Below, one piece after another: positions 6,754 through 62,010 of a DNA stretch of 64,000 nucleotides. Source of the stretch: Macrostomum lignano (taxonomy: Eukaryota). Every line of letters begins with the position of its first letter. The first letter of the stretch is position 1. The position numbers were made by a program, and so were the translations under genes. The notes below the pieces were generated by a model. That model ran no database searches. It saw nothing but the letters and a program-made list of their open reading frames with translations, and was not told the origin of the DNA. The DNA is taken from NCBI GenBank assembly GCA_002269645.1, contig NIVC01000190.1:186001-250000 (forward strand), given 5' to 3'.

Positions 6754-7424
6754 ATAAAAAAGCTGTAGTCTGTAAATGCTCGACCCCATTAATGTTTCTG
6801 CTATACATCTAATTATTGGAACACATGGTTAAATATAGACTAGTGTAGACACCATTGGAAATGTAACGTTTTGAATTTAAAATTTCTTGAAGGTAAACCA
6901 TTACCAAGGTATAAAAGATGATATACAATGTGTAATTTGTTTTGGCTGTCCGGTTGAAAACCTTACCCTAACAAGAATTGCGAAAGAGTCATTGCAAACA
7001 ACTCACTGGTGACTCTGGGGCGACTTGTACCGTTTATGACTCGTTTGATATTTTTATTTGGCTATTGGTGTCGGTTTATATCGATTTTTTTGTAAATTGT
7101 AAGTAAGACTATCTACTATATCTTCAGTAGTGTGTAACGCTTGTAATACAGTAAATTGTAACGATTGTAACGGTGTCAAATGCATTCCCTATGACAATTT
7201 ATTCAGTTTTGAAATGTAAACTGTATACAGTTCTGATTTTAGTAGATTTAGTTTTGAGAGAGTCAAGTACTGCTTTGATCAAATGCCATTCATATAAATA
7301 CACTGCTTCTAGAATTGTTTAACTTTTTTTGTTTGTTTAATGTTTTTGTTGAATAGCTTGCCAATTTACTGTAAATAGATATTGTCATCGTGAAGTATCT
7401 CTGCTAAAACGACTTAAAAAACTT

Positions 7425-9450
7425 CCTTAAAATCGCCCCATAATCTCCCTTAAAATCGCCCCAGAATCTCCATTTTAGAATCGCCCCAGAATTGCCCTTT
7501 AAATCGCCCCAGAATCCCATTTAGAATCGCCCCAGAACCTCCCTTAGAATCGCCCCAGAATTCCTCTTTGAATCGCCCCAGAACCTCCCTTAGAATCGCC
7601 CCAGAATACCACTTAAAATCGCCCCAGAACCTCCCTTAGAATCGCTCCATAATCCCCCTTAGAATCGCCCCGGAATCCCCCTTAGAATCGCCCCAGAACC
7701 TCCCTTAGAATCGCCCAGAACCTCCCTTAGAATCGCCCCAGAATCCCACTTAGAATCGCCCCAGAATCCCCCTTAGAATCGCCCCAGAATCCCCTTAGAA
7801 TCGCCCCGGAATCCCCCTTAGAATCGCCCTAGAATCCCACTTAGAATCGCCCCAGAATCGCCCCAGAACCTCCCTTAGAATCGCCCCAGAATCCCCCTTA
7901 GAATCGCCCCAGAATCCCCTTAGAATCGCCCCGGAATCCCCCTTAGAATCGCCCCAGAATCCCACTTTGAATCGCCCCAGAATCTCCCTTAGAATCGGCC
8001 CAGAATCCCCCTTAGAATCGCCCCGGAATCCCCCTTAAAATCGCCCCAGAATCCCACTTTGAATCGCCCCGGAACCTCCCTTAGAATCGCCCCAGAATCC
8101 CCCTTAGAATCGCCCCAGAATCCCCCTTAGAATCGCCCCGGAATCCTCCTTAGAATCGCCCCAGAATCCCACTTAGAATCGCCCCAGAATCCCCCTTAGA
8201 ATCGCCCCAGAATCCCCTTAGAATCGCCCCGGAATCCCCCTTAGAATCGCCCTAGAATCCCACTTAGAATCGCCCCAGAATCGCCCCAGAACCTCCCTTA
8301 GAATCGCCCCAGAATCCCCTTAGAATCGCCCCGGAATCCTCCTTAGAATCGCCCCAGAATCCCACTTAGAATCGCCCCAGAATCTCCCTTAGAATCGCCC
8401 CAGAATCCCCCTTAGAATCGCCCCAGAATCCCACTTTGAATCGCCCCAGAATCTCCCTTAGAATCGGCCCAGAATCCCCCTTAGAATCGCCCCGGAATCC
8501 CCCTTAAAATCGCCCCAGAATCCCACTTTGAATCGCCCCGGAACCTCCCTTAGAATCGCCCCAGAATCCCCCTTAGAATCGCCCCAGAATCCCCCTTAGA
8601 ATCGCCCCGGAATCCTCCTTAGAATCGCCCCAGAATCCCACTTAGAATCGCCCCAGAATCCCCCTTAGAATCGCCCCAGAATCCCCTTAGAATCGCCCCG
8701 GAATCCCCCTTAGAATCGCCCTAGAATCCCACTTAGAATCGCCCCAGAATCGCCCCAGAACCTCCCTTAGAATCGCCCCAGAATCCCCCTTAGAATCGCC
8801 CCGGAATCCTCCTTAGAATCGCCCCAGAATCCCACTTAGAATCGCCCCAGAATCTCCCTTAGAATCGCCCCAGAATCCCCCTTAGAATCGCCCCAGAATC
8901 CTCCTTAGAATCGCCCCGGAATCTCCCTTAGAATTGCCCCAGAATCCCCCTTAGAATCGCCCCGGAATCTCCCTTAGAATCGCCCTGGAATCCCCCTTAG
9001 AATCGCCACAGAATCCCCCTTAGAATCGCCCCAGAATCCTTAGAATCGCCCAGAATCCTCCTTAGAATCGCCCCAGAATCTCCCCTTAGAATCGCCCCGG
9101 AACCTCCCTTAGAATCGCCCCAGAATCCCACTTAGAATCGCCCCAGAATCTCCCTTAGAATCGCCCCGGAATCCTCCTTAGAATCGCCCCGGAATCTCCC
9201 TTAGAATTGCCCCAGAATCCCCCTTAGAATCGCCCCGAAATCTCCCTTAGAATCGCCCTGGAATCCCCCTTAGAATCGCCACAGAATCCCCCTTAGAATC
9301 GCCCCAGAATCCTCCTTAGAATCGCCCAGAATCCTCCTTAGAATCGCCCCAGAATCTCCCCTTAGAATCGCCCCGGAACCTCCCTTAGAATCGCCCCGGA
9401 ACCTCCCTTTGAATCGCCCCGGAACCTCCCTTAGAATCGCCCCAGAATCC
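7425..9450. repeat. ~23-bp minisatellite (TTAGAATCGCCCCAGAATCCCCC) between YIPF1 and selU
   Basis: About 2 kb of tandem copies ending ~80 bp before the selU ATG. Confidence 0.95.
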
Positions 9451-9532
9451 AATCGCTCTAAGAGCCTCCTGGAATTTTGTAAAGATTTTTAAAAATCGCC
9501 CTAATTATCAAAAACGTACCTTGAATATTATC

Positions 9533-12500
9533 ATGCATAACCTGTCACTGGCTTGGTTGCAGTTCGGTCGCTGCCGTGTCACCACCGCGGCCTTAGCGAC
9601 GGTGTGTCGCGTGTTCAGCCGCTACCAGTTAAACAGGTGCAGCACATTTAGCTACAACATCAAGCATAACAATAACAACAGTTCAATTCTAACAGAACCC
9701 AACCCATTGAATTGGGCAGCCTATGACGAAGTGATTGACGTTCGAACTCCGTCAGAATTCGCAGACGATCACCTGCCCGGAGCTGTTAATCTGCCGCTAT
9801 TAGGCGACGGGGATCGAGCAGCGATTGGTAAAACATTCGCCCGATCGCCGTTTGATGGGCGACGCTTGGGAGCATCTGTGATTAGTCAGAAAATCGGTGA
9901 ACTGCTGGGCACTCACTTTGCTGATAAGAGTGTCGATTTTAGGTAAGTCTAGCGTCCTAGAATCCTACATAATCCTTATTTCCTAGAATCCTACAAAATC
10001 CTTATTTCCTAGAATCCTACAAAATCCTTATTTCCTAGAATCCTACAAAATCCTTATTTCCTAGAATCCTACAAAATCCTTATTTCCTAGAATCCTACAA
10101 AATCCTTATTTCCTAGAATCCTACAAAATCCTTATTTCCTAGAATCCTACAAAATCCTTATTTCCTAGAATCCTACAAAATCCTTATTTTCTAAAACTCT
10201 ACAAAATCCTTATTTCCTAGAATCATACAAAATCCTTATTTCCTAGAATCATACAAAATCCTTATTTCCTAGAATCCTACAAAAAATCCTTATTTCCTAG
10301 AATCATACAAAATCCTTATTTCCTAGAATCATACAAAATCCTTATTTCCTAGAATTCTACAAAAAATCCTTATTTCCTAGAATCATACAAAATCCTTATT
10401 TCCTAGAATCCTACAAAAAATCCTTATTTCCTAGAATCATACAAAATCCTTATTTCCTAGAATCCTACAAAAAATCCTTATTTCCTAGAATCATACAAAA
10501 TCCTTATTTCCTAGAATTCTACAAAATCCTTATTTTCTAAAACTCTACAAAATCCTTATTTCCTAGAATCATACAAAATCCTTATTTCCTAGAATCCTAC
10601 AAAAAATCCTTATTTCCTAGAATCATACAAAATCCTTATTTCCTAAAATCCTACAAAAAATCCTTATTTCCTAAAATCCTACAAAAAATCCTTATTTCCT
10701 AGAATCATACAAAATCCTTATTTCCTAGAATTCTACAAAAAATCCTTATTTCCTAGAATCATACAAAATCCTTATTTCCTAGAATCCTACAAAAAATCCT
10801 TATTTCCTAGAATCACACAAAATCCTTATTTCCTAGAATCCTACAAAATCCTTATTTCCTAGAATCCTACAAAATCCTTATTTTCTAAAACTCTACAAAA
10901 TCCTTATTTCCTAGAATCATACAAAATCCTTATTTCCTAGAATCATACAAAATCCTTATTTCCTAGAATTCTACAAAATCCTTATTTCCTAAAATCCTAA
11001 AAAATCCCTATTTCCTAGAATCATACTGTGGTGACTTGGCTGGGTTGATTTTTGTTATTGATGTTAGCTTGTACTTTATTCTGTGTTTGGGGGTGGTGTT
11101 TTTACCTGTCTTGCTCTGTGCGCCTTTCTACAATATCTTGATGTACGCTCTTACTCATGTACTTTCTTCAATCTGGCTAATCTTGTTCTCCACCCCTAAG
11201 CCTTATCCACTAAATGTAGCGTGCTCAATATTTACAATAAAAATCGCAGTCGCTTGCCTTGTATCAAGCGTTTATCGTTCTACAATCTAAAGTGAAGTCT
11301 TTAAACCTACAAAATCCCCATTTCTTAGAATCCTACAAGATCCCTATTTCTTAGAATCTTTCAAAAATCCCCCTTTTCCTAGAATCCTACAAAACCCCCC
11401 CTTTCCTAGAATCTTTAAAAAATCCCCCTTTTCCTAGAATCCTACAAATCCCCCCTTTCCTAGAATCCTACAAATCCCCCCTTTCCTAGAATCCTACAAA
11501 ATCCCCCTTTCCTAGAATCCTACAGAATCCCCCTTTCCTAGAATCCTACAAAATCCTCCTTTCCTAGAATCCTACAAAATTCCCCTTTCCTAGAATCCCA
11601 CAATATCCCCTTTCCTAGAATCCCACAATATCTCCTTTCCCAAAATCCTGGTTAGAAACTGACTAAATGGAGTAGATGTGTCTACAAAATCCCCTTTTCC
11701 CATTGCAAAAAATCCTTAAATTATCAGAATTCTATCTTCGCATCCCAATATCTTAGTGCCCTAAAATGCGTCGCAAGGTGTCTTGCAAATTTCATAATTC
11801 TTCATAATTATTGAAATCCTCGCCAGGCCGTTAATCTACTGCTGGCGCGGCGGCCAGCGCTCCCACTCTCTAGCGATCGTGCTTTCCCAGATTGGCTACC
11901 AGCCAACAGTTCTTGCCGGCGGCTACCGGGCCTACAGGCGCGTCGTTGTGAAGTCACTGAATGACCTTGCCGGTGTTGAGCCGCCTGTTGGACGACTTAA
12001 ACGCGCAGTGGTTTTAGCTGGGCTGACAGGTTCAGGCAAGACTTACCTGCTTGAACGATTGGCTAGACAAGGAGAGCAGGTATGCAATTCTACTGCTTTA
12101 TAGAGTTTACAGTAGATCTCGTCTAGTTTTTAAAGCGCTGCCCGAAAAGAGCCGTTTTAAGTTTAGCCATTTTAGGTGTAAGTTTTTGCTTACGAGCATA
12201 ACATTAGTTAGTAATCTGTAATTACCTGCCTGAAAAGGGCCGTTTTAACTGAACTAGATGTAGTAGAACTAGAAGTGTCTGTAAGTAACCTGCCTGGAAA
12301 GTGCCGTTTTAACTGACTAGATGGAGTAGAACTAGAAGTGTCTGTAAGTAACCTGCCTTAAAAGGGCCGTTTTAACTGACTATATTTAGTAGAACTAGAC
12401 TAGAAGTGTCTGTAAGTAACCTGCCTGGAAAGTGCCGCTTTAACTGACTAGATGGAGTAGAACTAGAAGTGTCTGTAAGTAACCTGCCTTAAAAGGGCCG

Positions 12501-13728
12501 TTTTAACTGACTATATTTAGTAGAACTAGACTAGAAGTGTCTGTAAGTAACCTGCCTTAAAGGGGACGTTTTAACTGACTAGATGGAGTAGAACTAGAAG
12601 TGTCTGTAAGTAACCTGCCTTAAAGGGGACGTTTTAACTGACTAGATTTAGTATAACTAGAAGTGTCTATAAGTAAGATGCCTTAAAGGGGCCGTTTAGC
12701 TGACTAGATTTAGTAGAACCAGTAGTGTCTGTAAGTAAGCTGCATTAAAAGGGCCGTTTTAACTGAACTAGATGTAGTAGAACTAGAAGTGTCTGTAAGT
12801 AACCTGCATTAAAAGGGCCGTTTTAACTGAACTAGATGTAGTAGAACTAGAAGTGTCTGTAAGTAACCTGCATTAAAAGGGCCGTTTTAACTGAACTAGA
12901 TGTAGTAGAACTAGAAGTGTCTGTAAGTAACCTGCATTAAAAGGGCCGTTTTAACTGACTATATTTAGTAGAACTAGAAGTGTCTGTAAGTAAGCTGCCT
13001 TAAAGGGGACGTTTTAACTGACTAGATGGAGTAGAATTGCCTGTAAATAACCTGCCCGAAAAGGGTCATTTAAAACTTTATTTCATACATAAACCCTTTT
13101 TTACAATTGCCAGGTAGTCGATCTGGAGTCCCTAGCAAATCACCGAGGCTCCCTACTCGGGTCCGATCCCAACAGACCCGATCAGCCAAGTCAGAAATCG
13201 TTCGAATCGTCGCTTTATCGAACTCTCAGCCAGCTGGACGCGGACAAGCCGGTGTGGCTGGAATGCGAGTCGGCTCGCATTGGGTATCGCTCTCTGCCGC
13301 AGTCGCTAGTAGCCACCCTGGCCCGGTCGCCCAGAATACTTTTAGAAGCAGAAAGTGCAGACGATCGAGTCAAGCATCTGATTAAACAGTACGGCTCACT
13401 TGTAGAACGTACTGAACTGCTGATTGAGAGGCTCAATCTACTCGGCAGGCATCATTCGAAATCCACAAAAGCAAACTGGCTTGCCGCAGCCGCTGCAGGC
13501 GACATCCCCAAGCTGGTCCATCTATTGCTAGCTGATCATTACGATCCGCTGTATCGCCATAGCAGGCGCCGCTATTTCTTAGAGACTGATAGCAGACGCG
13601 TGATCCGACTGGCCTTGAACTGCAACACTATTCATAGTGACGAGATTTTAGTTCAGCTTAAACAGGCTAGGGATTCACTGCTGTTTGATAATGAACCGTC
13701 TGGCAGAATAGCTGTGAACCGCATTTAG
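9533..13728 (+). CDS. selU: tRNA 2-selenouridine synthase (SelU/MnmH/YbbB family), ~425 aa, with N-terminal presequence; exons 9533-9942, 11827-12079, 13114-13728
   Basis: Rhodanese domain (IDVRTPSEFADDHLPGAVNLPLL...) with active-site loop YCWRGGQRS, then LAGGYRAYR, P-loop GLTGSGKT, DLESLANHRGSLLG, QPSQKSFES, VWLECESARIG and LLADHYDPLY. All are co-linear with bacterial MnmH (E. coli IDVRAPIEF, CCARGGQRS, GCTGSGKT, DLEGLARHRGS, EDESRMIG, LLEEYYDPMY). Introns: AG|GTAAGT...CCAG|G (phase 2) and CAG|GTATGC...CCAG|GTA (phase 0). The spliced frame is open. Confidence 0.95.
9955..11025. repeat. 26-bp minisatellite (CCTAGAATCCTACAAAATCCTTATTT) in selU intron 1
   Basis: About 40 tandem copies starting 12 bp after the donor site. 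Confidence 0.95.
11305..11640. repeat. Variant of the 26-bp minisatellite (CCTAGAATCCTACAAAATCCCCCTTT) in selU intron 1
   Basis: About 12 diverged copies. Confidence 0.85.
12225..13060. repeat. ~63-bp minisatellite in selU intron 2
   Basis: Unit AACTAGAAGTGTCTGTAAGTAACCTGC...GGGCCGTTTTAACTGA..., about 13 copies. Confidence 0.9.
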
Positions 13729-48697: not shown

Positions 48698-51600
48698 TTA
48701 GTCAGTCTTTGGCTTAGCAAAATAACGCTCAATAGTACCAACGCCGGTTCGTCCATCCGCTGCAATCCTGGCTCGTTTTCCACCGCCGGATGCTGATCCA
48801 CCGGCAGGTCTACCAGACGATGAAGCTGCTTCAATTCGTTTCCGACTACTAGCAGAGTTGGAGCCTGGTGTGAAGCACGCCGAGCCATCGTTTGAATAAT
48901 CGTTAACGGCTGTTTGAATAGCAGATCGACTTAAACAAAAGTCCAGATGACGATTGAGACCCACTAGGCCGCCTGGCTGCGACGCTGAGCAGATTGGGCA
49001 TGACAGTGCAGATTCGCTAGCACTACTGGCGCTAGTCTTTGTTTCAACGCTCGTTGATTCAACTGAGTTGAATTTCGATGCGTTTTCTGATGTTGAACTC
49101 GTCACTGGCGTAGACGATTTTGAAACAGTTTCGTTAGAACTGGAGGAACAAACAGCCGCAGTAGTACTGGTCTTTGTTGAGGTTTCAGCGATAGTCTTTG
49201 TCGATCTGACGAGCAGCTCATCTAACCGAGCCTGCTTTGGTCCTGCACTGCCGACACCGCTGCTGCAGTCAGCAGCAATGACGGCCTTCCTAGGCGTCAA
49301 CGAGGACACCCGGACGCCCAGCAAACGAATACGCGGTGCCGGACGTCCCGGCAGGAACTCCTGGCGCAGCAAAGCCGCGGCAGCTGATTGGATCGCCTGC
49401 ACAGAATCCGTAGCCGAGGGCAAGCCGTGACTTCTAGTGAGCACCTCGAACGTGTCCAGCTTTAATTTAATAGTCACCGTTCGACCAAGGAAGCCGGACT
49501 TGGTCAGGTGTCGCACAAGAGATTCGCACAGCTCCGGAAGTTTCTCGTCTAGTAGCCAGGTTAAACTGTCAGTAGCTTGAAAGGTTCGCTCAACACTGAC
49601 ACTTTTCCTATCGGAGTCCGTTTCGCTGCTAACTGAGCTGCTCGACTGTTCTGTCTGAATATGATGAGAAAAATGCATTTTTTTAACAAAAACATTTTTT
49701 GTTAAAGTAGCTTTTCTAGCAGCATAAATACTCGTATGCATGTGGTGACTTAACAGCACTGCCATAGTCCTTGCCACATACAGTGTGTGATCAACAAGTC
49801 CTACCGGTCTTCTCCAATGCTCCAATTGATTTATAACCCGCTACACTTTTTCTGAGCCCTCCTGATTCTGGCATACTTTTTTAGAAGCCTAGCAAAGTAT
49901 TACAGCTTTGATACGAGCCTGGCTTGAACTAATATTTTGTGCACTTAAACAGAACAACTGCTGAAATGATGTGCAACGAGCTTGAAAACTACTTAAAGTA
50001 GGAATATCTAAATATTTCTGGAGAAATTCTCCAAAGAGGACTAAACTACTGACGTTCCAATAAGTCTCTAACAGACTTCTTATTTCTTTGCCACTAACCC
50101 CACTTTTCTGTGCTTCTTTTATGATTTGATTCCTTCTGCAAATTAGAATTCTGGGACGCAATTATTGAAACTGTCGCAACAATCTTCTTGTCCCAAATAG
50201 CACGGATCCTGCTGTACGAGCTTGTCCGAATATATTTTTTACTCACGAACTTGACCACACACAGGTACACAGATACGTATTCAGGCATACTATTTCCGTC
50301 AGGTACGAGTATGTACACATCTGTGCCTTGGGGGTTTGGCCCTTAGAGGCGTGAATCGCACGCCAAGCCCCAGACTGGCCAATTTCCACGCAAAAGCCTA
50401 AAAGCCACGATGAAAACTATTGCGTACGTTAGAGGATTGACGAAATATAAAAGTACCCTGTGTTCTTGAACTTTTAAGTGTCGATGAGCGACTGGAATTC
50501 CCCTTTAAATTTGATCCTGTGTTACATCAAGACCAAGAATCAAGCTATATTTAGAATACTTATTTGGAAACAACCATCCAGATTTTCAAAAACGAAAATC
50601 AACGAAACAGTGCAAGATATACACCAAAATTGACAGGCAGATACTATTATCTGCTGACAGATTCGTCAGAGTCAGAGATAAACTCAAATGAATGCAACAG
50701 ATGGTCACGATGGACAAGGACGCCTAAACTTAGAAATCTGGACTGGCAACTGAGCTCTCTGGCTGGGCCATTTTGCTACAGTTTTAGGCCTAAGCAAACG
50801 TATAGAAAATTCCAACGCTGATATATATTTATTCCTTTAAGCGCATTTAGTATGACCACATAGATTTGAGGTTTGAGGCTGATGGTGTCATTGTAGTGAC
50901 CCTCGCGAAATTTCTACACCGTACGATGTTTATTTCTATAAAATTCTGCGATAGAGTACCAGATAAATTCTACGAGCTGGAAACTTCTCTCTGTAGCTAT
51001 TTCTAATTTCGTAGCAAATATTTATACTCAATAGATGTTTAATTACTGTAATTTATCATCATGCAAAATATGAATACCGTACGGACTATACTAACTATAG
51101 AATTTGTTTTACTTTACTAAAATGATTCTAGAAATTTCCGGAAGGCCAAATTTAAATTTAATACTAGATATTGATTATATAGTAGCTAAATCAGTTTTTT
51201 TCTCCAAGCTTCTTTCTTCTACACTCCAAGAAACTCAAGTGCTAACAAGAGAAACAAACCGAAGGCGAACCACCCACCGCCTAGCTCTGCCTTATTCCTT
51301 TCACAAGTTGCTACATCATGCAATTCACAGCCACGAGGACGAACCTAAATGCCTGAAGATAAGAAAGTCAGGGATGCTGTACATCCTGTGTGAGTGTGTG
51401 CCTGCGAACAGCATTGGCTCAGGAGTCAGCGCCAATTGCTTCAGCGCTAGCTGCGAGACGGTATCGCCGAAGGCGCTGCGCCAAAGTGCGTACAACTTTC
51501 CATTGTTAATATCCCTGATTGATGCGAAGCTTACCCCATAGCCAAATCCACCAGAAAGGCCAAGGCAGGCCCGCATATAGAATTGATAAGTGAGCGGCCG

Positions 51601-52102
51601 GCAGGCGTGGTACAAAGCGCCACGCTTTCGTACAAATCCGGCAAGTTGACACCAAGACTGTTTAACCAGGCCTCGGTTACGCGACCAATTCCGGGCATTT
51701 TCTCAACCGGAAGGCCTAATAAACTCCAGCACCCGGTCTGAGCTACCGGCAACTCGGTATTGACCGTTGGGCTTGTTAAAATCTGAACAATTTTGGCTAC
51801 CATAGGATTCGGCCCGATGCCAGCGCTTGCGGTCAGGCTGCTGGAGATGAATACTCGATAGCGCAATTCCGCTACAGCTTCAGTGGCGCTAGCGCCGAAT
51901 TGGCGCCTACCGATAGCGCCGCGAGATGACAATTGGGACAGACGCGATTGCGATCGTCTGTTCCCGCTTTGGCATCAAAGCACTCATCGTTAGCGTCTAC
52001 TGCCTTGATAACATCATCTACTTCAGCATCCGGATTTGCGTATAACATCCGCATCTACCTCAGCATCGCGTCGTCTTAACATTCGAATCCGCATCTACCT
52101 CA
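48698..52102 (-). CDS. POLK: Y-family DNA polymerase kappa, 3' part; last exon 49654-48698, preceding exon ~52100-51535 (contains indels); 5' end lies in or beyond the gap
   Basis: FGASATEAVAELRYRVF...LTASAGIGPNPMVAKI(C)SDFNKPNGQY, LPVEKMPGIGRVTE, RKSVSVERTF, GRTVTIKLK...IRLLGVRVSSL, UBZ finger CPIC...LNRHLDFC, and C-terminal PIP-like TIERYF. Confidence 0.9.
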
Positions 52103-53033
52103 NNNNNNNNNNNNNNNNNNNNNNNNNNNNNNNNNNNNNNNNNNNNNNNNNNNNNNNNNNNNNNNNNNNNNNNNNNNNNNNNNNNNNNNNNNNNNNNNNN
52201 NNNNNNNNNNNNNNNNNNNNNNNNNNNNNNNNNNNNNNNNNNNNNNNNNNNNNNNNNNNNNNNNNNNNNNNNNNNNNNNNNNNNNNNNNNNNNNNNNNNN
52301 NNNNNNNNNNNNNNNNNNNNNNNNNNNNNNNNNNNNNNNNNNNNNNNNNNNNNNNNNNNNNNNNNNNNNNNNNNNNNNNNNNNNNNNNNNNNNNNNNNNN
52401 NNNNNNNNNNNNNNNNNNNNNNNNNNNNNNNNNNNNNNNNNNNNNNNNNNNNNNNNNNNNNNNNNNNNNNNNNNNNNNNNNNNNNNNNNNNNNNNNNNNN
52501 NNNNNNNNNNNNNNNNNNNNNNNNNNNNNNNNNNNNNNNNNNNNNNNNNNNNNNNNNNNNNNNNNNNNNNNNNNNNNNNNNNNNNNNNNNNNNNNNNNNN
52601 NNNNNNNNNNNNNNNNNNNNNNNNNNNNNNNNNNNNNNNNNNNNNNNNNNNNNNNNNNNNNNNNNNNNNNNNNNNNNNNNNNNNNNNNNNNNNNNNNNNN
52701 NNNNNNNNNNNNNNNNNNNNNNNNNNNNNNNNNNNNNNNNNNNNNNNNNNNNNNNNNNNNNNNNNNNNNNNNNNNNNNNNNNNNNNNNNNNNNNNNNNNN
52801 NNNNNNNNNNNNNNNNNNNNNNNNNNNNNNNNNNNNNNNNNNNNNNNNNNNNNNNNNNNNNNNNNNNNNNNNNNNNNNNNNNNNNNNNNNNNNNNNNNNN
52901 NNNNNNNNNNNNNNNNNNNNNNNNNNNNNNNNNNNNNNNNNNNNNNNNNNNNNNNNNNNNNNNNNNNNNNNNNNNNNNNNNNNNNNNNNNNNNNNNNNNN
53001 NNNNNNNNNNNNNNNNNNNNNNNNNNNNNNNNN
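52103..53033. other. Assembly gap (931 N)
   Basis: Run of N. Confidence 1.
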
Positions 53034-53325
53034 AAGAGTTGGTCAAATGGCAGAGAAACATAACAGATGCCATGCTGCAGTACAATCATGTAATGAGCAA
53101 GCAATACTTGTTTATAGGCAAAGTTTTATTACTCAAGCGTGACTAAGCTATAAAGTTACTTTATGCTTTGGCTAAGTCTTCCGCGTTGGTTAACATGCCG
53201 TTTAAGCCATATTTATATGCAATAAGGCGCAAGGAGAAACTAATTAATCACTAAGCGCATTTATAAAATAAAAACTGCGCTAAGAGCTCATGAAATTTTA
53301 ATTCAAACCACTAATGCCTTTTCAG

Positions 53326-58000: not shown

Positions 58001-58753
58001 TCAATCAGTATCCGCAGGTTCAATAACTCCCAAGCAAACGTTGGCAAAGTCTACAAACAGAGGCAGCTGCATCGCCCGCTCCAGGTCAGCTTCCGGTCTC
58101 CGACTGCCGTTAAGTCGGACGAGCAGCTCTCGCAGCTCCGGATTGCCTAGCAGCTTAATGAGCTGCGGGCACTGCCGCAGTCGGGCTAAATTTTCAGCTG
58201 CCAAATAATCTTCGCTGTCCAGACCGAGATCTAGCAGCTCGGCGCAAGGCGCGGGCGGCGGCTGCTTCTTCTGCTCTTCTGCTAGCTGACGTCGCCTTCT
58301 TTCGGCTAGAAATTCGCGAGTCTCTCGCTCCTCTTTGGCATTGCAGCTGGCGCGATGACGGGCGCAACAAGCTGTCGAACAATAGCGAGCCAGCTGGCAG
58401 CCAGGGCAGCGGTACTTCGGCGCCGGTGATTCGCATACTGAGCAGCGAAGACGATCAAGCTTAGGCAAAGGCCGCGGGCGTAGGAAACTTCCGCTGGCGC
58501 TACCGCTGCCACGACCACGACCGCGGCCGCCTCCGCGACCACGATAGCCAGAGAAGCCGCCTCTTCCGCCTCCCCTGCCTCTGCCTCTTCCTCCGCCACC
58601 TCGATAATTATTATAGCCGTTATTGATTGGCCCAGTTAGAGAAGTATTGCCGCCTGCTTCGGTTACTCCTACATCTGCAGCAGGGTTAGCGGCAGCTGCT
58701 GCTGCTGGATGGCAATTGTTGCCATGGTATCTTTGCTGCCTAAATCGATTCAT
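58001..58753 (-). CDS. ZNHIT3: Zinc finger HIT domain protein 3 (Hit1/TRIP3), intronless, with N-terminal RGG-rich extension
   Basis: zf-HIT CSVC...KYRCPGC...RYCSTACCARH and C-terminal PAC-HIT-like LLGNPELRELL...MQLPLFVDFANVCLGVIEP (human ZNHIT3: LLLNPHLRQLM...MQEPLFVEFADCCLGIVEP). Confidence 0.88.
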   Translation of the reverse strand: MNRFRQQRYHGNNCHPAAAAAANPAADVGVTEAGGNTSLTGPINNGYNNYRGGGGRGRGRGGGRGGFSGYRGRGGGRGRGRGSGSASGSFLRPRPLPKLDRLRCSVCESPAPKYRCPGCQLARYCSTACCARHRASCNAKEERETREFLAERRRRQLAEEQKKQPPPAPCAELLDLGLDSEDYLAAENLARLRQCPQLIKLLGNPELRELLVRLNGSRRPEADLERAMQLPLFVDFANVCLGVIEPADTD

Positions 58754-59828: not shown

Positions 59829-62010
59829 ATGAATAACAACGACAGTAAGCAAATCAAAGCGAATAGTCTAGGTAAAGGCAACGATCTCTATTGCCAAGTG
59901 TCTGGATTCTGTCAGCGCACAACTATACACGGCCTGTCTCATATGTACCAATCGAAAACATCAAAACGGAAAATCTTTTGGCTAACAGTATTCGTGCTTG
60001 GCCTCGTTGCTACTATAGTGCATCTGACATTTCATGCGATGCAATTTCTGGAATCGCCAACCATTATCACGTTGGATCATGAAGGTTCTGAATTCGAATT
60101 TCCCGACGTCACAATCTGCTCGCAAACGCCTACAACAAGTCGATTCTACGAACGAGGAACGGAAAAATTTCCAAACATACAAAACGGCTTTACAGCGATG
60201 GATCTTCTTTTGTATCCGGTTTACAATCAAACATACGATTCCGTACATTTGCTTCCCTACAAAGAGGAAATTCTATTACATAAAAGACTAATACAGCACC
60301 AGTATGCATCTATGCCAACAAAGCACAAAGGTTTCGCCCTCGATGAGCTGGTTATCAAATGTAGCTTTCACAAGTCAGATTGCAGATTACAGTTCACCTT
60401 ACTACAGAATCCGTATTATCTGAACTGTTATACCTTCCAACCGCCGGAACGAAACTTAAAGACTACTAGACCAGAAGACGGCCTGTTGCTGCTTCTGTAC
60501 ATAGGAAATGCCCAAAAGAACAATATCTTTCCAGGCAAAAACGCTACCATAACTAGCCGCAGTCGACCAACTAGTCAAAAAAGGGAAACTGGCAACGATT
60601 GGTTTGCTCGAATTCTTCTACCGGAGTACGAACCGGCAGGCGTGAAAATTGTCTTCCACGAAAAAGACGCATTCCCAGCTCTTAGAGCAGCTGGCTCGAT
60701 TGTGGGAGCCGGACAGTTTAGCGAGATCGAATTAGGTAGGTAAAAAATTAACTGCTTTGCTCTTATTACACAATTAGATCTGAAAAGGATCCCGCGTCGA
60801 GATGTTATCGAGGGAGTCTTTGATTACGATTTGATAAAACTTACAAAAGCTAGTCTTTAAATCACGCTTAGAAATTTGATACAAGTGAGCTGGGAGAAAC
60901 TATTAACATTACTTTAAAAACTATACTTACCTACCAACAGGTATGATACAAGAACGAAAACTAAACAAGGGATCCTCACCCTGTGTTGACACTGAACCAA
61001 AAGTGTGGTTTCTAACCAGTTTAGACGAATCTGGTTGGCCTGTGTTTCGCGAATTCAACGCCGAACCTGGCGACTGCATTTACGAATTTCAACAGCGAGA
61101 CCTATACAAGGAGTGCGGCTGCACTAGCCACCGAGTACCGCTGCAGCGAGATCACAAAATGTTTAACAGCATTGATCGTGGCGATCAAGTAGGCTGGTGC
61201 TACAACAGCACTAGCTTGTTACTAGATCTTGGGCTAGATGTCAACCAGATTGTCAAATCGGTGAAAGGGGATCCTGCCAAACTAGTTAATATCAGTAAAA
61301 CAGCGATCCAATCTAGCCACGCCAATAGTCGCCTGGTGGAGCGCTATTTACGAAGAGTCAACTGTCATGATAGCCTATTGGACAGGTTCAGCGATCCGCA
61401 CTACAACAGTATCCAACAGTGCACTGACGGCGGCGAAAAGGCGCTCTATGCCTGCCAGAAAAACGAGTACAAATCTGTTCATAGCACAGCTAGCTGGCCA
61501 AGATATTCGGATATCCAAGAAATTATCGAGGAGGATATTCTTCCAGCACTGCTCATACCGAAGAACAATCTTAGCGACGGCAATAAAACTAAAGTTGAGT
61601 ATCGACCATTAGCGCACGATCTATTCGACTTCGATTCGAACGGCCAGTGGACAGCTCAAGTGGAGTTAGTAAAAGAAAATTTTGTTAAACTGCAACTACA
61701 CCCAGTCGAGGTGCTAGTCAATGTGCACAGAGAGGAACCGGCATACAGCATCTGGGAGGCGCTCGGAGAACTAGGTGGCATCATCGGACTATGGTTGGGC
61801 ATGAGTTTCCTTGGCGTCATTGAGGTGTGCGAATTCCTTATCAATTTGACATCGGCTGCTAGACGAGGCAAGACTTTACAGTTAGTGAAGCGACAAGAGC
61901 CCGATGCAGTGAGCGGGCCCTATGGAGAAGCTGAAAGTGCAGCGCCAGAGCTTCTCCTATCGGAAATATCGAATGGTGTCGACGTGGATCAGCCGACGCA
62001 AAATTGCTGA
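59829..62010 (+). CDS. DEG/ENaC family member 2; exons 59829-60735 and 60941-62010
   Basis: FCQRTTIHGL (HG gating motif), TM1 IFWLTVFVLGLVATIVHL, FPDVTICS, CSFHKSDC...NPYYLNCYTF, Cys-rich thumb, and TM2 YSIWEALGELGGIIGLWLGMSFLGVIEVCEF. One phase-1 intron G|GTAGGT...CAG|GT. Confidence 0.92.

What the first reader, a model, noticed from the sequence alone, without database searches (positions are those of the whole stretch)
9533..9700. SelU carries a ~54-residue presequence that looks like a mitochondrial targeting peptide
Seen: MHNLSLAWLQFGRCRVTTAALATVCRVFSRYQLNRCSTFSYNIKHNNNNSSILT precedes the point where bacterial MnmH begins. It has no Asp/Glu in 54 residues, 5 Arg plus 1 Lys, is rich in Ser/Thr/Ala/Leu, and has R-2-type sites (SRY|Q, NRC|S). 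Established: animal mt-tRNA-Lys/Glu/Gln carry xm5s2U34 made by the MnmE/MnmG/MnmA homologs GTPBP3, MTO1 and TRMU, which is the bacterial-like substrate SelU needs. Inference: the enzyme adds a last step (geranylation or selenation) to the mitochondrial wobble pathway, so a mitochondrial selenophosphate source (SEPHS2/SelD-type) should also exist in this organism.
Basis: partly seen in the sequence, partly recalled or inferred. Interest (0 to 1): 0.85.

Follow-up and report, generated by a model that had tools for sequence, protein, structure and literature searches.

The report
Flatworm SelU enzyme with mitochondrial-type leader
A flatworm (Macrostomum lignano) nuclear gene encodes an intact bacterial-type tRNA selenouridine synthase whose extra, acid-free, basic N-terminal stretch looks like a mitochondrial import signal, but neither its destination nor the exact 5' end of its mRNA could be verified here.

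Summary
Window 9533-9694 (+) encodes the quoted 54 residues: no Asp/Glu, 5 Arg and 1 Lys.

**The gene.** They head a three-exon, 425-codon SelU/MnmH gene in Macrostomum lignano nuclear DNA. All catalytic motifs are intact. Three homeologous copies show purifying selection.

**The extension is obligatory.**
- The bacterial start aligns to residue ~49.
- Met1 is the only in-frame ATG in the gene.
- No ATG lies in the 2.2 kb upstream.

**It looks like a presequence.**
- Net charge is positive.
- AlphaFold2 predicts one low-confidence amphipathic helix (residues 17-33) followed by an unstructured linker.
- There is an R26-V-F|S29 cleavage-type motif.
- About a fifth of the top SelU homologues carry similar basic N-terminal extensions. 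Two are named protists, one a non-photosynthetic choanoflagellate.

**What is not shown.**
- Localisation was not tested and no trained predictor was available.
- The composition is only moderately unusual (about 1-3.5% of random open frames).
- All six public gene models are 5'-partial and begin downstream of ATG 9533.
- A spliced-leader acceptor at 9557-9562 could supply an in-frame AUG, giving MFGRCRV...
- The gene's donor lineage is unresolved.

**Verdict:** partly supported. This is a new variant of a known enzyme family, and it is experimentally tractable.

The parts
7425..9450 (.). 23-bp-unit tandem array directly upstream of the gene. Together with the 82-nt unique stretch that follows, it leaves no ATG on the + strand from 7341 to 9532.
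9451..9532 (+). Unique A/T-rich 5' flank, a candidate core promoter or 5'UTR. It contains no ATG. It diverges more between gene copies (7 of 82 nt versus L003) than the coding leader does (5 of 162).
9533..9535 (+). ATG start codon. It is the only in-frame ATG of the 1278-nt coding sequence and is conserved in all three homeologous copies.
9533..9694 (+). The 54-codon N-terminal extension (presequence-like): 0 D/E, 5 R, 1 K, 2 H. Pfam and NCBIfam matches of the whole protein begin only at residues 62-67, so none covers the extension.
9557..9562 (+). TTGCAG, the only match to the published M. lignano trans-splice acceptor motif [T/C]TNCAG in 9300-9950. Joining the spliced leader (which ends ...TTGCATG) at 9563 puts its AUG in frame, giving MFGRCRVTT...
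   Evidence: conserved in L001 and L003
9581..9631 (+). Residues 17-33, the only helix that AlphaFold2 predicts in the extension (pLDDT about 44-60). It coincides with the hydrophobic-moment peak. R15, R26 and R30 lie on one face; L21, V24, C25, V27, F28 and Y31 lie on the other.
9608..9619 (+). R26-V27-F28-S29, an R-3 (MPP/Icp55-type) cleavage pattern. Copy L003 has F28Y, which keeps the pattern.
9533..9942 (+). Exon 1: the leader plus the first part of the rhodanese domain. Donor site AG|GTAAGT.
9943..11826 (+). Intron 1 (GT...AG), mostly 26-bp tandem arrays.
11827..12079 (+). Exon 2. Carries the catalytic loop Y-C142-W-R-G-G-Q-R-S (Cys codon 11840-11842) and the Walker A motif G-L-T-G-S-G-K-T (12020-12043).
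12080..13113 (+). Intron 2 (GT...AG), mostly a 63-bp tandem array.
13114..13728 (+). Exon 3: the C-terminal SelU P-loop domain. Stop codon TAG at 13726-13728.

Best explanation
**What it is.** The window is Macrostomum lignano nuclear DNA, identical to NIVC01000190.1. [quoted passage not shown]

**The leader.** The first ~48-54 residues have no counterpart in bacterial enzymes and are obligatorily translated. The most likely reading is a mitochondrial matrix-targeting presequence with three elements:
- a positively charged amphipathic helix at about residues 15-31, which would bind the import receptors;
- an R26-V-F|S29 site, which would be cut by the processing peptidase (with Icp55 trimming);
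- an Asn/Ser-rich unstructured linker (about 30-50) joining to the rhodanese domain.

**Inferred function.** In the matrix the enzyme would act on 2-thiouridine-34 of mt-tRNA-Glu and mt-tRNA-Gln. It would first geranylate the sulfur using its P-loop domain. If selenophosphate is available there, it would then replace the sulfur with selenium via Cys142.

**Shown:** gene structure, enzyme family membership, intact motifs, selective constraint, the obligatory extension and its physicochemical character.

**Inferred:** import, the cleavage site, the substrate tRNAs and the chemistry in vivo.
For: **Enzyme identity and integrity**
- NCBIfam MnmH equivalogs score 381 bits (cut-off 266) and 307.5 bits (cut-off 219.75).
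- Every column that is invariant in the 15-sequence alignment (the flatworm protein plus 14 bacterial proteins) includes the flatworm residue. This covers YCWRGGxRS and the Walker A motif.
- The AlphaFold2 model is confident from about residue 52 onward (pTM 0.77).

**A host gene, not contamination**
- The introns are GT-AG.
- The neighbours are Yip1 and a MYST acetyltransferase, in the same order in three homeologous contigs.
- pN/pS of the mature part is 0.16-0.34 between copies.

**The extension is obligatory**
- Met1 is the only in-frame ATG.
- No ATG lies in the 2.2 kb upstream.
- The ATG is conserved in all three copies.

**Presequence character**
- 0 D/E and net +6 over 54 residues.
- Hydrophobic moment 0.53 at residues 14-31.
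- An R-3 motif and TOM20-type phi-x-x-phi-phi motifs.
- A single predicted helix, 17-33, in an otherwise low-confidence leader.
- Arginines segregate to one helical face.
- All values fall within the range of recalled textbook presequences.
- The F28Y change in one copy preserves the cleavage pattern.

**Comparative evidence**
- About 25 of 112 top representative homologues carry N-terminal extensions, and most of these are acid-free and basic.
- Named examples are the choanoflagellate Diaphanoeca grandis and the alga Aureoumbra lagunensis.
Against: - No trained localisation predictor or experiment was available.
- The composition occurs in about 1-3.5% of random open frames from the same window. 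From my own knowledge, random basic sequences often work as weak import signals, so resemblance is cheap.
- Amphipathicity is not significant against shuffles (p = 0.12).
- The helix has low pLDDT.
- There are too few substitutions in the leader to show selection on it (1-3 nonsynonymous and 1-2 synonymous changes).
- None of six public models contains ATG 9533.
- No orthologue from another flatworm was found, so conservation of the leader could not be checked.
- From my own knowledge: a selenophosphate source in mitochondria is unknown, and cytosolic tRNAs also carry s2U34.
Confidence: 0.5

Rival explanations
1. Non-targeting leader. After the gene was acquired and its original start codon lost, translation simply begins at the nearest upstream AUG. 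The extra residues are a tolerated, unstructured appendage. The enzyme works in the cytosol on mcm5s2U34 of tRNA-Lys, Glu and Gln.
For: - The leader shows no detectable homology to anything.
- Most of it is modelled with low confidence.
- Its composition arises by chance in a few percent of open frames in this genome region.
- No significant excess of amphipathicity.
- No measurable constraint on the leader.
- From my own knowledge: selenophosphate synthetase is cytosolic in animals.
Against: - Complete absence of acidic residues together with regularly spaced Arg, a helix and a cleavage-type motif is what import signals look like.
- Independent eukaryotic SelU homologues repeatedly carry comparable extensions.
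- From my own knowledge: the bacterial-type xm5s2U substrate is the mitochondrial one.
Confidence: 0.25
2. A different 5' end (not exclusive with the best explanation). The mRNA is trans-spliced at the TTGCAG acceptor (9557-9562). The AUG at the 3' end of the M. lignano spliced leader then starts translation, giving MFGRCRVTTAALATV... (416 aa) instead of MHNLSLAWLQFGR...
For: - The published leader CGGTCTCTTACTGCGAAGACTCAATTTATTGCATG ends in ATG.
- The published acceptor motif is [T/C]TNCAG, and about 30% of genes are trans-spliced (PMC8629364).
- The only such motif in 9300-9950 lies here and is in frame.
- It is conserved in all copies.
- Two transcript-based NCBI models start 3 nt downstream of it, at G12.
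Against: - The motif is common (about 4.9 per kb) and has a 1-in-3 chance of being in frame.
- The UniRef models include 15 nt upstream of the acceptor, starting at L6.
- ATG 9533 is conserved while the flank upstream of it diverges faster.
- No RNA data could be retrieved, and there are no Logan-derived members in the cluster.
Confidence: 0.3
3. The leader is a secretory signal peptide, a membrane anchor, or a signal for another compartment.
For: Two short hydrophobic runs (LSLAWLQFG; VTTAALATVC) are followed by a small-residue site, VFS|R.
Against: - The hydrophobic runs are weak and interrupted by Arg.
- The maximum 19-residue Kyte-Doolittle mean is 0.86, far below a membrane segment or a strong h-region.
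- A tRNA-modifying enzyme has no substrate in the secretory pathway (established knowledge).
Confidence: 0.04
4. The gene is an unexpressed or decaying relic, so its N-terminus has no meaning.
For: - All public models are partial.
- One copy is annotated only as a 131-aa fragment.
- No expression data could be retrieved here.
Against: - All three copies keep an intact 425-codon frame, splice sites and every catalytic residue.
- pN/pS is 0.16-0.34.
- From my own knowledge of that assembly: the annotated models derive from a transcript-based annotation.
Confidence: 0.05

Closest known systems
Bacterial tRNA 2-selenouridine synthase SelU / MnmH / YbbB (E. coli, Salmonella)
   Same: Two-domain architecture: a rhodanese domain with a catalytic Cys in YCWRGGxRS, plus a P-loop domain with Walker A. 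Scores lie above the curated equivalog cut-offs. Identity is 40-50% over residues ~60-390.
   Different: - Encoded in an animal nuclear genome with two spliceosomal introns.
- Carries a ~48-residue basic N-terminal extension and a ~30-residue C-terminal tail.
- The nearly invariant bacterial Trp after the catalytic loop (IGW) is Tyr.
- Activity has not been tested.
Nuclear-encoded mitochondrial wobble-uridine enzymes of bacterial ancestry (MTU1/TRMU = MnmA, MTO1 = MnmG, GTPBP3 = MnmE)
   Same: A bacterial-type U34 modification enzyme fitted with an N-terminal presequence. It would act on the same tRNAs, one step downstream (established knowledge plus inference).
   Different: Those enzymes are universal in animals and their localisation has been shown experimentally. 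SelU is absent from the other animals in the databases searched, and its localisation is only inferred.
Extension-bearing SelU homologues of protists (Diaphanoeca grandis EP00040_P043869; Aureoumbra lagunensis A0A7S3NPK4; many marine eukaryote-like metagenome and metatranscriptome sequences)
   Same: SelU core preceded by acid-poor, basic N-terminal extensions of 45-180 residues. The closest sequence by identity (P0161, 56% over the 219 aligned residues) is of this type.
   Different: - The extensions share no sequence similarity.
- Some begin with signal-peptide-like stretches, suggesting plastid targeting.
- Neighbour-joining gives no supported grouping with the flatworm protein.
Archaeal split SelU (Methanococcales)
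   Same: The same two domains; weak matches to both subunit models.
   Different: It is split into two genes, and the scores here are far below the cut-offs (53 versus 200 bits; 31.5 versus 180 bits).

Membership tests
tRNA 2-selenouridine(34) synthase MnmH/SelU (NCBIfam NF008752, TIGR03167) | Whole-protein score above the curated equivalog cut-off | tested here: met
   381 bits against a cut-off of 266; 307.5 bits against 219.75
tRNA 2-selenouridine(34) synthase MnmH/SelU | N-terminal rhodanese domain with the catalytic Cys in a C-x-R-G-G-x-R-S loop | tested here: met
   Y141-C142-W-R-G-G-Q-R-S149. These columns (apart from the variable Q147) are invariant across the 15 aligned sequences, the flatworm protein plus 14 bacterial homologues. 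Pfam Rhodanese matches residues 63-174.
tRNA 2-selenouridine(34) synthase MnmH/SelU | C-terminal P-loop (Walker A) SelU domain | tested here: met
   G202-L-T-G-S-G-K-T209. PF26341 AAA_SelU is recorded for the 98%-identical P0001.
tRNA 2-selenouridine(34) synthase MnmH/SelU | Geranylation and selenation activity on s2U34 tRNA | not testable with these tools
   Needs an enzyme assay or nucleoside mass spectrometry.
Mitochondrial matrix-targeting presequence (MPP-cleaved) | N-terminal, about 15-60 residues, net positive, essentially free of acidic residues, rich in Arg/Ser/Thr/Ala/Leu | tested here: met
   0 D/E, 5 R + 1 K, first acidic residue at 55. Such composition occurs in 1-3.5% of random open frames.
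Mitochondrial matrix-targeting presequence (MPP-cleaved) | Can form a positively charged amphipathic helix | tested here: inconclusive
   Hydrophobic moment 0.53 at residues 14-31, but p = 0.12 against shuffles. AlphaFold2 predicts a helix at 17-33 with low pLDDT. Arg lies on one face.
Mitochondrial matrix-targeting presequence (MPP-cleaved) | Processing-peptidase motif (R-2, R-3 or R-10) | tested here: met
   R26-V-F|S29 (R-3) and R35-C|S37 (R-2). F28Y in copy L003 keeps the pattern. These are short patterns with low specificity.
Mitochondrial matrix-targeting presequence (MPP-cleaved) | Positive call by a trained predictor (TargetP, MitoFates, DeepLoc) | not testable with these tools
   No such predictor was available. 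Only hand-computed features, plus a calibration on sequences recalled from memory.
Mitochondrial matrix-targeting presequence (MPP-cleaved) | Is actually translated: the mRNA contains the start codon | tested here: inconclusive
   Met1 is the only in-frame ATG, and it is the first ATG for 2.2 kb. However, all six public models start at nt 9548-9578, and an in-frame spliced-leader AUG is possible.
Mitochondrial matrix-targeting presequence (MPP-cleaved) | Directs import and is cleaved in vivo | not testable with these tools
   Needs a fusion-protein or fractionation experiment.
Secretory signal peptide | Uninterrupted hydrophobic h-region of 7-15 residues with high hydropathy | tested here: not met
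   The longest uncharged run, VTTAALATVC, has mean KD 1.8 and is flanked by Arg. The maximum 19-residue KD is 0.86.
Horizontally acquired gene in an animal | Physically integrated in host DNA: host neighbours, spliceosomal introns, several homeologous copies | tested here: met
Horizontally acquired gene in an animal | Supported phylogenetic nesting inside a donor clade | tested here: inconclusive
   Neighbour-joining with 200 bootstraps gives no grouping of the flatworm protein above 13%. The nearest sequences are a mix of bacterial-like and protist-like ones.

The most novel reading that the evidence does not exclude
An animal uses a SelU-type enzyme inside its mitochondria to geranylate and/or selenate the wobble 2-thiouridine of mt-tRNAs. 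This would be the first enzyme-backed selenouridine/geranyl-thiouridine pathway in a eukaryote. More broadly, SelU homologues with organelle-targeting leaders would form an unrecognised, patchily distributed eukaryotic trait spanning choanoflagellates, algae and this flatworm.
Probability: 0.35. Interest if true: 0.8.

Novelty: new variant of a known kind. Interest (0 to 1): 0.6.

Why it matters
- Reviews treat selenouridine as a prokaryotic (and Methanococcales) trait. A modification compendium nevertheless lists mnm5se2U for eukaryotes, and the papers I could search named no eukaryotic enzyme.
- An intact, constrained SelU gene in a transgenic-tractable flatworm gives a concrete way to test whether eukaryotic tRNAs are selenated or geranylated, and in which compartment.
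- If mitochondrial, it adds a step to the GTPBP3/MTO1/TRMU wobble pathway. It also raises the question of how selenophosphate or geranyl diphosphate reaches the matrix.
- It is a clean case of a foreign-looking gene acquiring introns and an N-terminal leader.

Tried and rejected
1. **Homology search with the leader alone.** It returned nothing. It even missed P0001, which shares the sequence, so this negative result is uninformative.
2. **Profile search built from extension-bearing homologues.** It was meant to pull out named eukaryotic relatives. The top 120 hits were again almost all bacterial-type sequences and yielded no newly named eukaryote.
3. **Selection test on the leader.** The copies differ by only 2-5 nt in 162, so no conclusion is possible.
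4. **Phylogenetic placement by neighbour-joining with bootstrap.** The flatworm protein sits on a long branch and its partner changes between replicates. I therefore do not claim a bacterial or a protist donor.
5. **Transcript evidence.** The 90% identity cluster contains only six database models and no RNA-assembly members. A literature search for the gene ID found nothing.
6. **Sigma-70 promoter and terminator scan.** Irrelevant for a eukaryotic gene.
7. **Literature search for M. lignano selenophosphate synthetase and for the mitochondrial tRNA anticodons.** Nothing usable was found.
8. **Contamination.** Considered and rejected, given the host neighbours, the introns and the three syntenic copies.
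Full report
**Where we are.** The window is eukaryotic nuclear DNA packed with tandem arrays. The spliced product of the gene at the finding is 98-100% identical to six Macrostomum lignano database proteins. Locus L002, from contig NIVC01000190.1 of assembly GCA_002269645.1, is base-for-base identical to the window in every segment compared.

**Gene model.** Three exons on the + strand: 9533-9942, 11827-12079 and 13114-13728. The splice sites are AG|GTAAGT...CAG|G and CAG|GTATGC...CAG|G. Together they give an uninterrupted 425-codon frame. Both introns are mostly tandem repeats.

**Enzyme identity.**
- The protein scores 381 bits against the NCBIfam MnmH equivalog NF008752 (cut-off 266) and 307.5 bits against TIGR03167 (cut-off 219.75). 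The matches begin at residues 62-65.
- Pfam finds the rhodanese domain at 63-174.
- The closest solved structure is only an isolated rhodanese domain.
- In an alignment with 14 bacterial homologues, the flatworm protein keeps every invariant residue. These include Y-C142-W-R-G-G-x-R-S and the Walker A motif G-L-T-G-S-G-K-T.
- An AlphaFold2 model is confident from about residue 52 onward (mean pLDDT 80.6, pTM 0.77).

**The gene belongs to the animal.**
- Two further homeologous loci (L001, L003) carry the same gene between the same neighbours, a Yip1-family gene upstream and a MYST acetyltransferase downstream.
- I reconstructed all three coding sequences. Each is intact.
- For the mature part, pN/pS is 0.16-0.34, which indicates purifying selection since the copies diverged.

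**The observation.** The quoted 54 residues are exactly what 9533-9694 encodes: 0 Asp/Glu, 5 Arg, 1 Lys, 2 His, with the first acidic residue at position 55. Bacterial start methionines align to residue ~49, so the true extension is about 48 residues.

**The extension must be translated.**
- Met1 is the only in-frame ATG in the 1278-nt coding sequence.
- No ATG lies on the + strand between 7341 and 9532. Any transcript starting within 2.2 kb upstream therefore meets this AUG first.
- The ATG is conserved in all three copies.
- The 82-nt unique flank just upstream diverges more than the leader does: 7 of 82 nt against 5 of 162 nt, versus L003.

**How presequence-like is it?**
- The hydrophobic moment peaks at 0.53 over residues 14-31.
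- AlphaFold2 predicts one helix, residues 17-33, in an otherwise low-confidence leader, followed by an unstructured Asn/Ser-rich linker.
- On a helical wheel, R15, R26 and R30 lie opposite L21, V24, C25, V27, F28 and Y31.
The only substitution there among copies, F28Y, keeps the pattern.
- On simple measures the leader falls within the range of eight textbook presequences and outside seven of the eight cytosolic N-termini tested.

**Caveats on the resemblance.**
- 3.5% of stop-free 54-codon windows from this same DNA are acid-free with at least 6 K/R. Among ATG-initiated windows it is 1 of 117.
- The amphipathicity is not significant against shuffles (p = 0.12).
- The leader has too few substitutions to test for selection.
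- A signal peptide or membrane anchor is unlikely (maximum 19-residue hydropathy 0.86).

**Comparative evidence.**
- An exhaustive HMMER search found 4084 homologues.
- Among 112 top representatives in which the IDVR motif could be located, the median motif position is 21, the bacterial type. About 25 have it at position 55 or later.
- Most of these extensions are acid-free and basic over the first 40 residues.
- Two carry taxon names: a complete transcript ORF of the choanoflagellate Diaphanoeca grandis (MFMSRIRFRPRVMRTV...) and a protein of the pelagophyte alga Aureoumbra lagunensis.
- The sequence most identical to the flatworm protein is P0161 (56% over the 219 aligned residues). It sits on a 997-nt transcript-like contig and has a 76-residue basic extension.
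- N-terminal leaders therefore recur in eukaryotic SelU homologues. In a non-photosynthetic choanoflagellate, the mitochondrion is the only organelle that contains tRNAs.
- The origin of the flatworm gene is unresolved. Neighbour-joining bootstraps never support any partner above 13%.

**The 5' end is the weak point.**
- All six public models are 5'-partial. They start at L6 (nt 9548), G12 (9566) or V16 (9578), and none includes ATG 9533.
- Because no alternative ATG exists, these are incomplete models rather than evidence for a downstream start.
- M. lignano trans-splices about 30% of its genes to a 35-nt leader that ends in ATG. The acceptor motif is [T/C]TNCAG (PMC8629364).
- The only such motif in 9300-9950 is TTGCAG at 9557-9562. 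Joining the leader at 9563 puts its AUG in frame, giving MFGRCRVTTAALATV....
- Two NCBI models begin 3 nt downstream of that point. The UniRef models extend 15 nt upstream of it.
- Either start keeps residues 11-54, so the core of the putative signal is unaffected.

**Literature.** Reviews describe selenouridine as a prokaryotic and Methanococcales trait. A modification compendium lists mnm5se2U for all three domains without naming a eukaryotic enzyme. No paper on a eukaryotic SelU or on Mlig025034 was found.

**Assessment.**
- Shown: an intact, constrained, intron-bearing SelU/MnmH gene in an animal genome, with an obligatory ~48-residue basic, acid-free N-terminal extension.
- Inferred (about 0.5): the extension is a mitochondrial presequence, and the enzyme modifies s2U34 of mt-tRNA-Glu and mt-tRNA-Gln.
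- From my own knowledge, not tested here: rhabditophoran flatworm mitochondria read AAA as Asn and use tRNA-Lys(CUU). mt-tRNA-Lys is therefore probably not a substrate.
- The need for a matrix selenophosphate source is unaddressed. Without one, the enzyme would stop at geranylation.
- The main rival is a cytosolic enzyme with a functionless leader.

Noticed in passing
window 9557-9562: TTGCAG matches the published M. lignano spliced-leader acceptor motif. It would place the leader's terminal AUG in frame with the SelU coding sequence, replacing the first 10 residues with a single Met.
   Followed up: partly
window 7341-9532: A 2.2-kb stretch without any ATG on the + strand. It consists mostly of a 23-bp tandem array (7425-9450) that abuts the gene's 82-nt unique 5' flank. 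An A/T-rich TTTTTAAAAAT element lies at 9486-9496, about 40 nt upstream of the ATG.
   Followed up: partly
P0214, P0190, P0161 (L004), P0129-P0133, P0142, P0159, P0174, P0196, P0200, P0234, P0250: Many SelU homologues from protists or eukaryote-like marine contigs carry basic N-terminal extensions of 45-180 residues. Some start with signal-peptide-like stretches, which may indicate plastid targeting. In the papers found, selenouridine is treated as a prokaryotic trait.
   Followed up: partly
L001 (NIVC01001816.1), L002 (NIVC01000190.1, identical to the window), L003 (NIVC01000750.1): Three homeologous copies keep the Yip1 - SelU - MYST acetyltransferase order. Exon and flanking-sequence divergence is about 1-3%, while intron repeat arrays differ in length. 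The public model for the L003 copy is only a 131-aa fragment, although the full 425-codon frame is intact.
   Followed up: yes
window residue Y161 (exon 2, 11897-11899): The Trp that is nearly invariant in bacterial SelU (motif IGW) is Tyr in the flatworm protein, and Phe or Tyr in many extension-bearing homologues. This may be a marker of a eukaryotic subgroup.
   Followed up: no
window ~52100-53050: A run of N (assembly gap). It explains the apparent 23% GC in the composition profile and the long 'X' ORFs.
   Followed up: no
window 48698-49825 (-), 58001-58753 (-), 59829-62010 (+): Other ORFs that look like host genes, judged by eye from the translations only: a DNA polymerase kappa/IV-like C-terminal region, a zf-HIT-type protein with a Gly/Arg-rich N-terminus, and two adjacent DEG/ENaC-like channel exons.
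   Followed up: no
The word-indexed protein search with the 62-residue leader reported no candidate, although P0001 contains 57 of those residues identically. Short or low-complexity queries can give false negatives in this tool.
   Followed up: no
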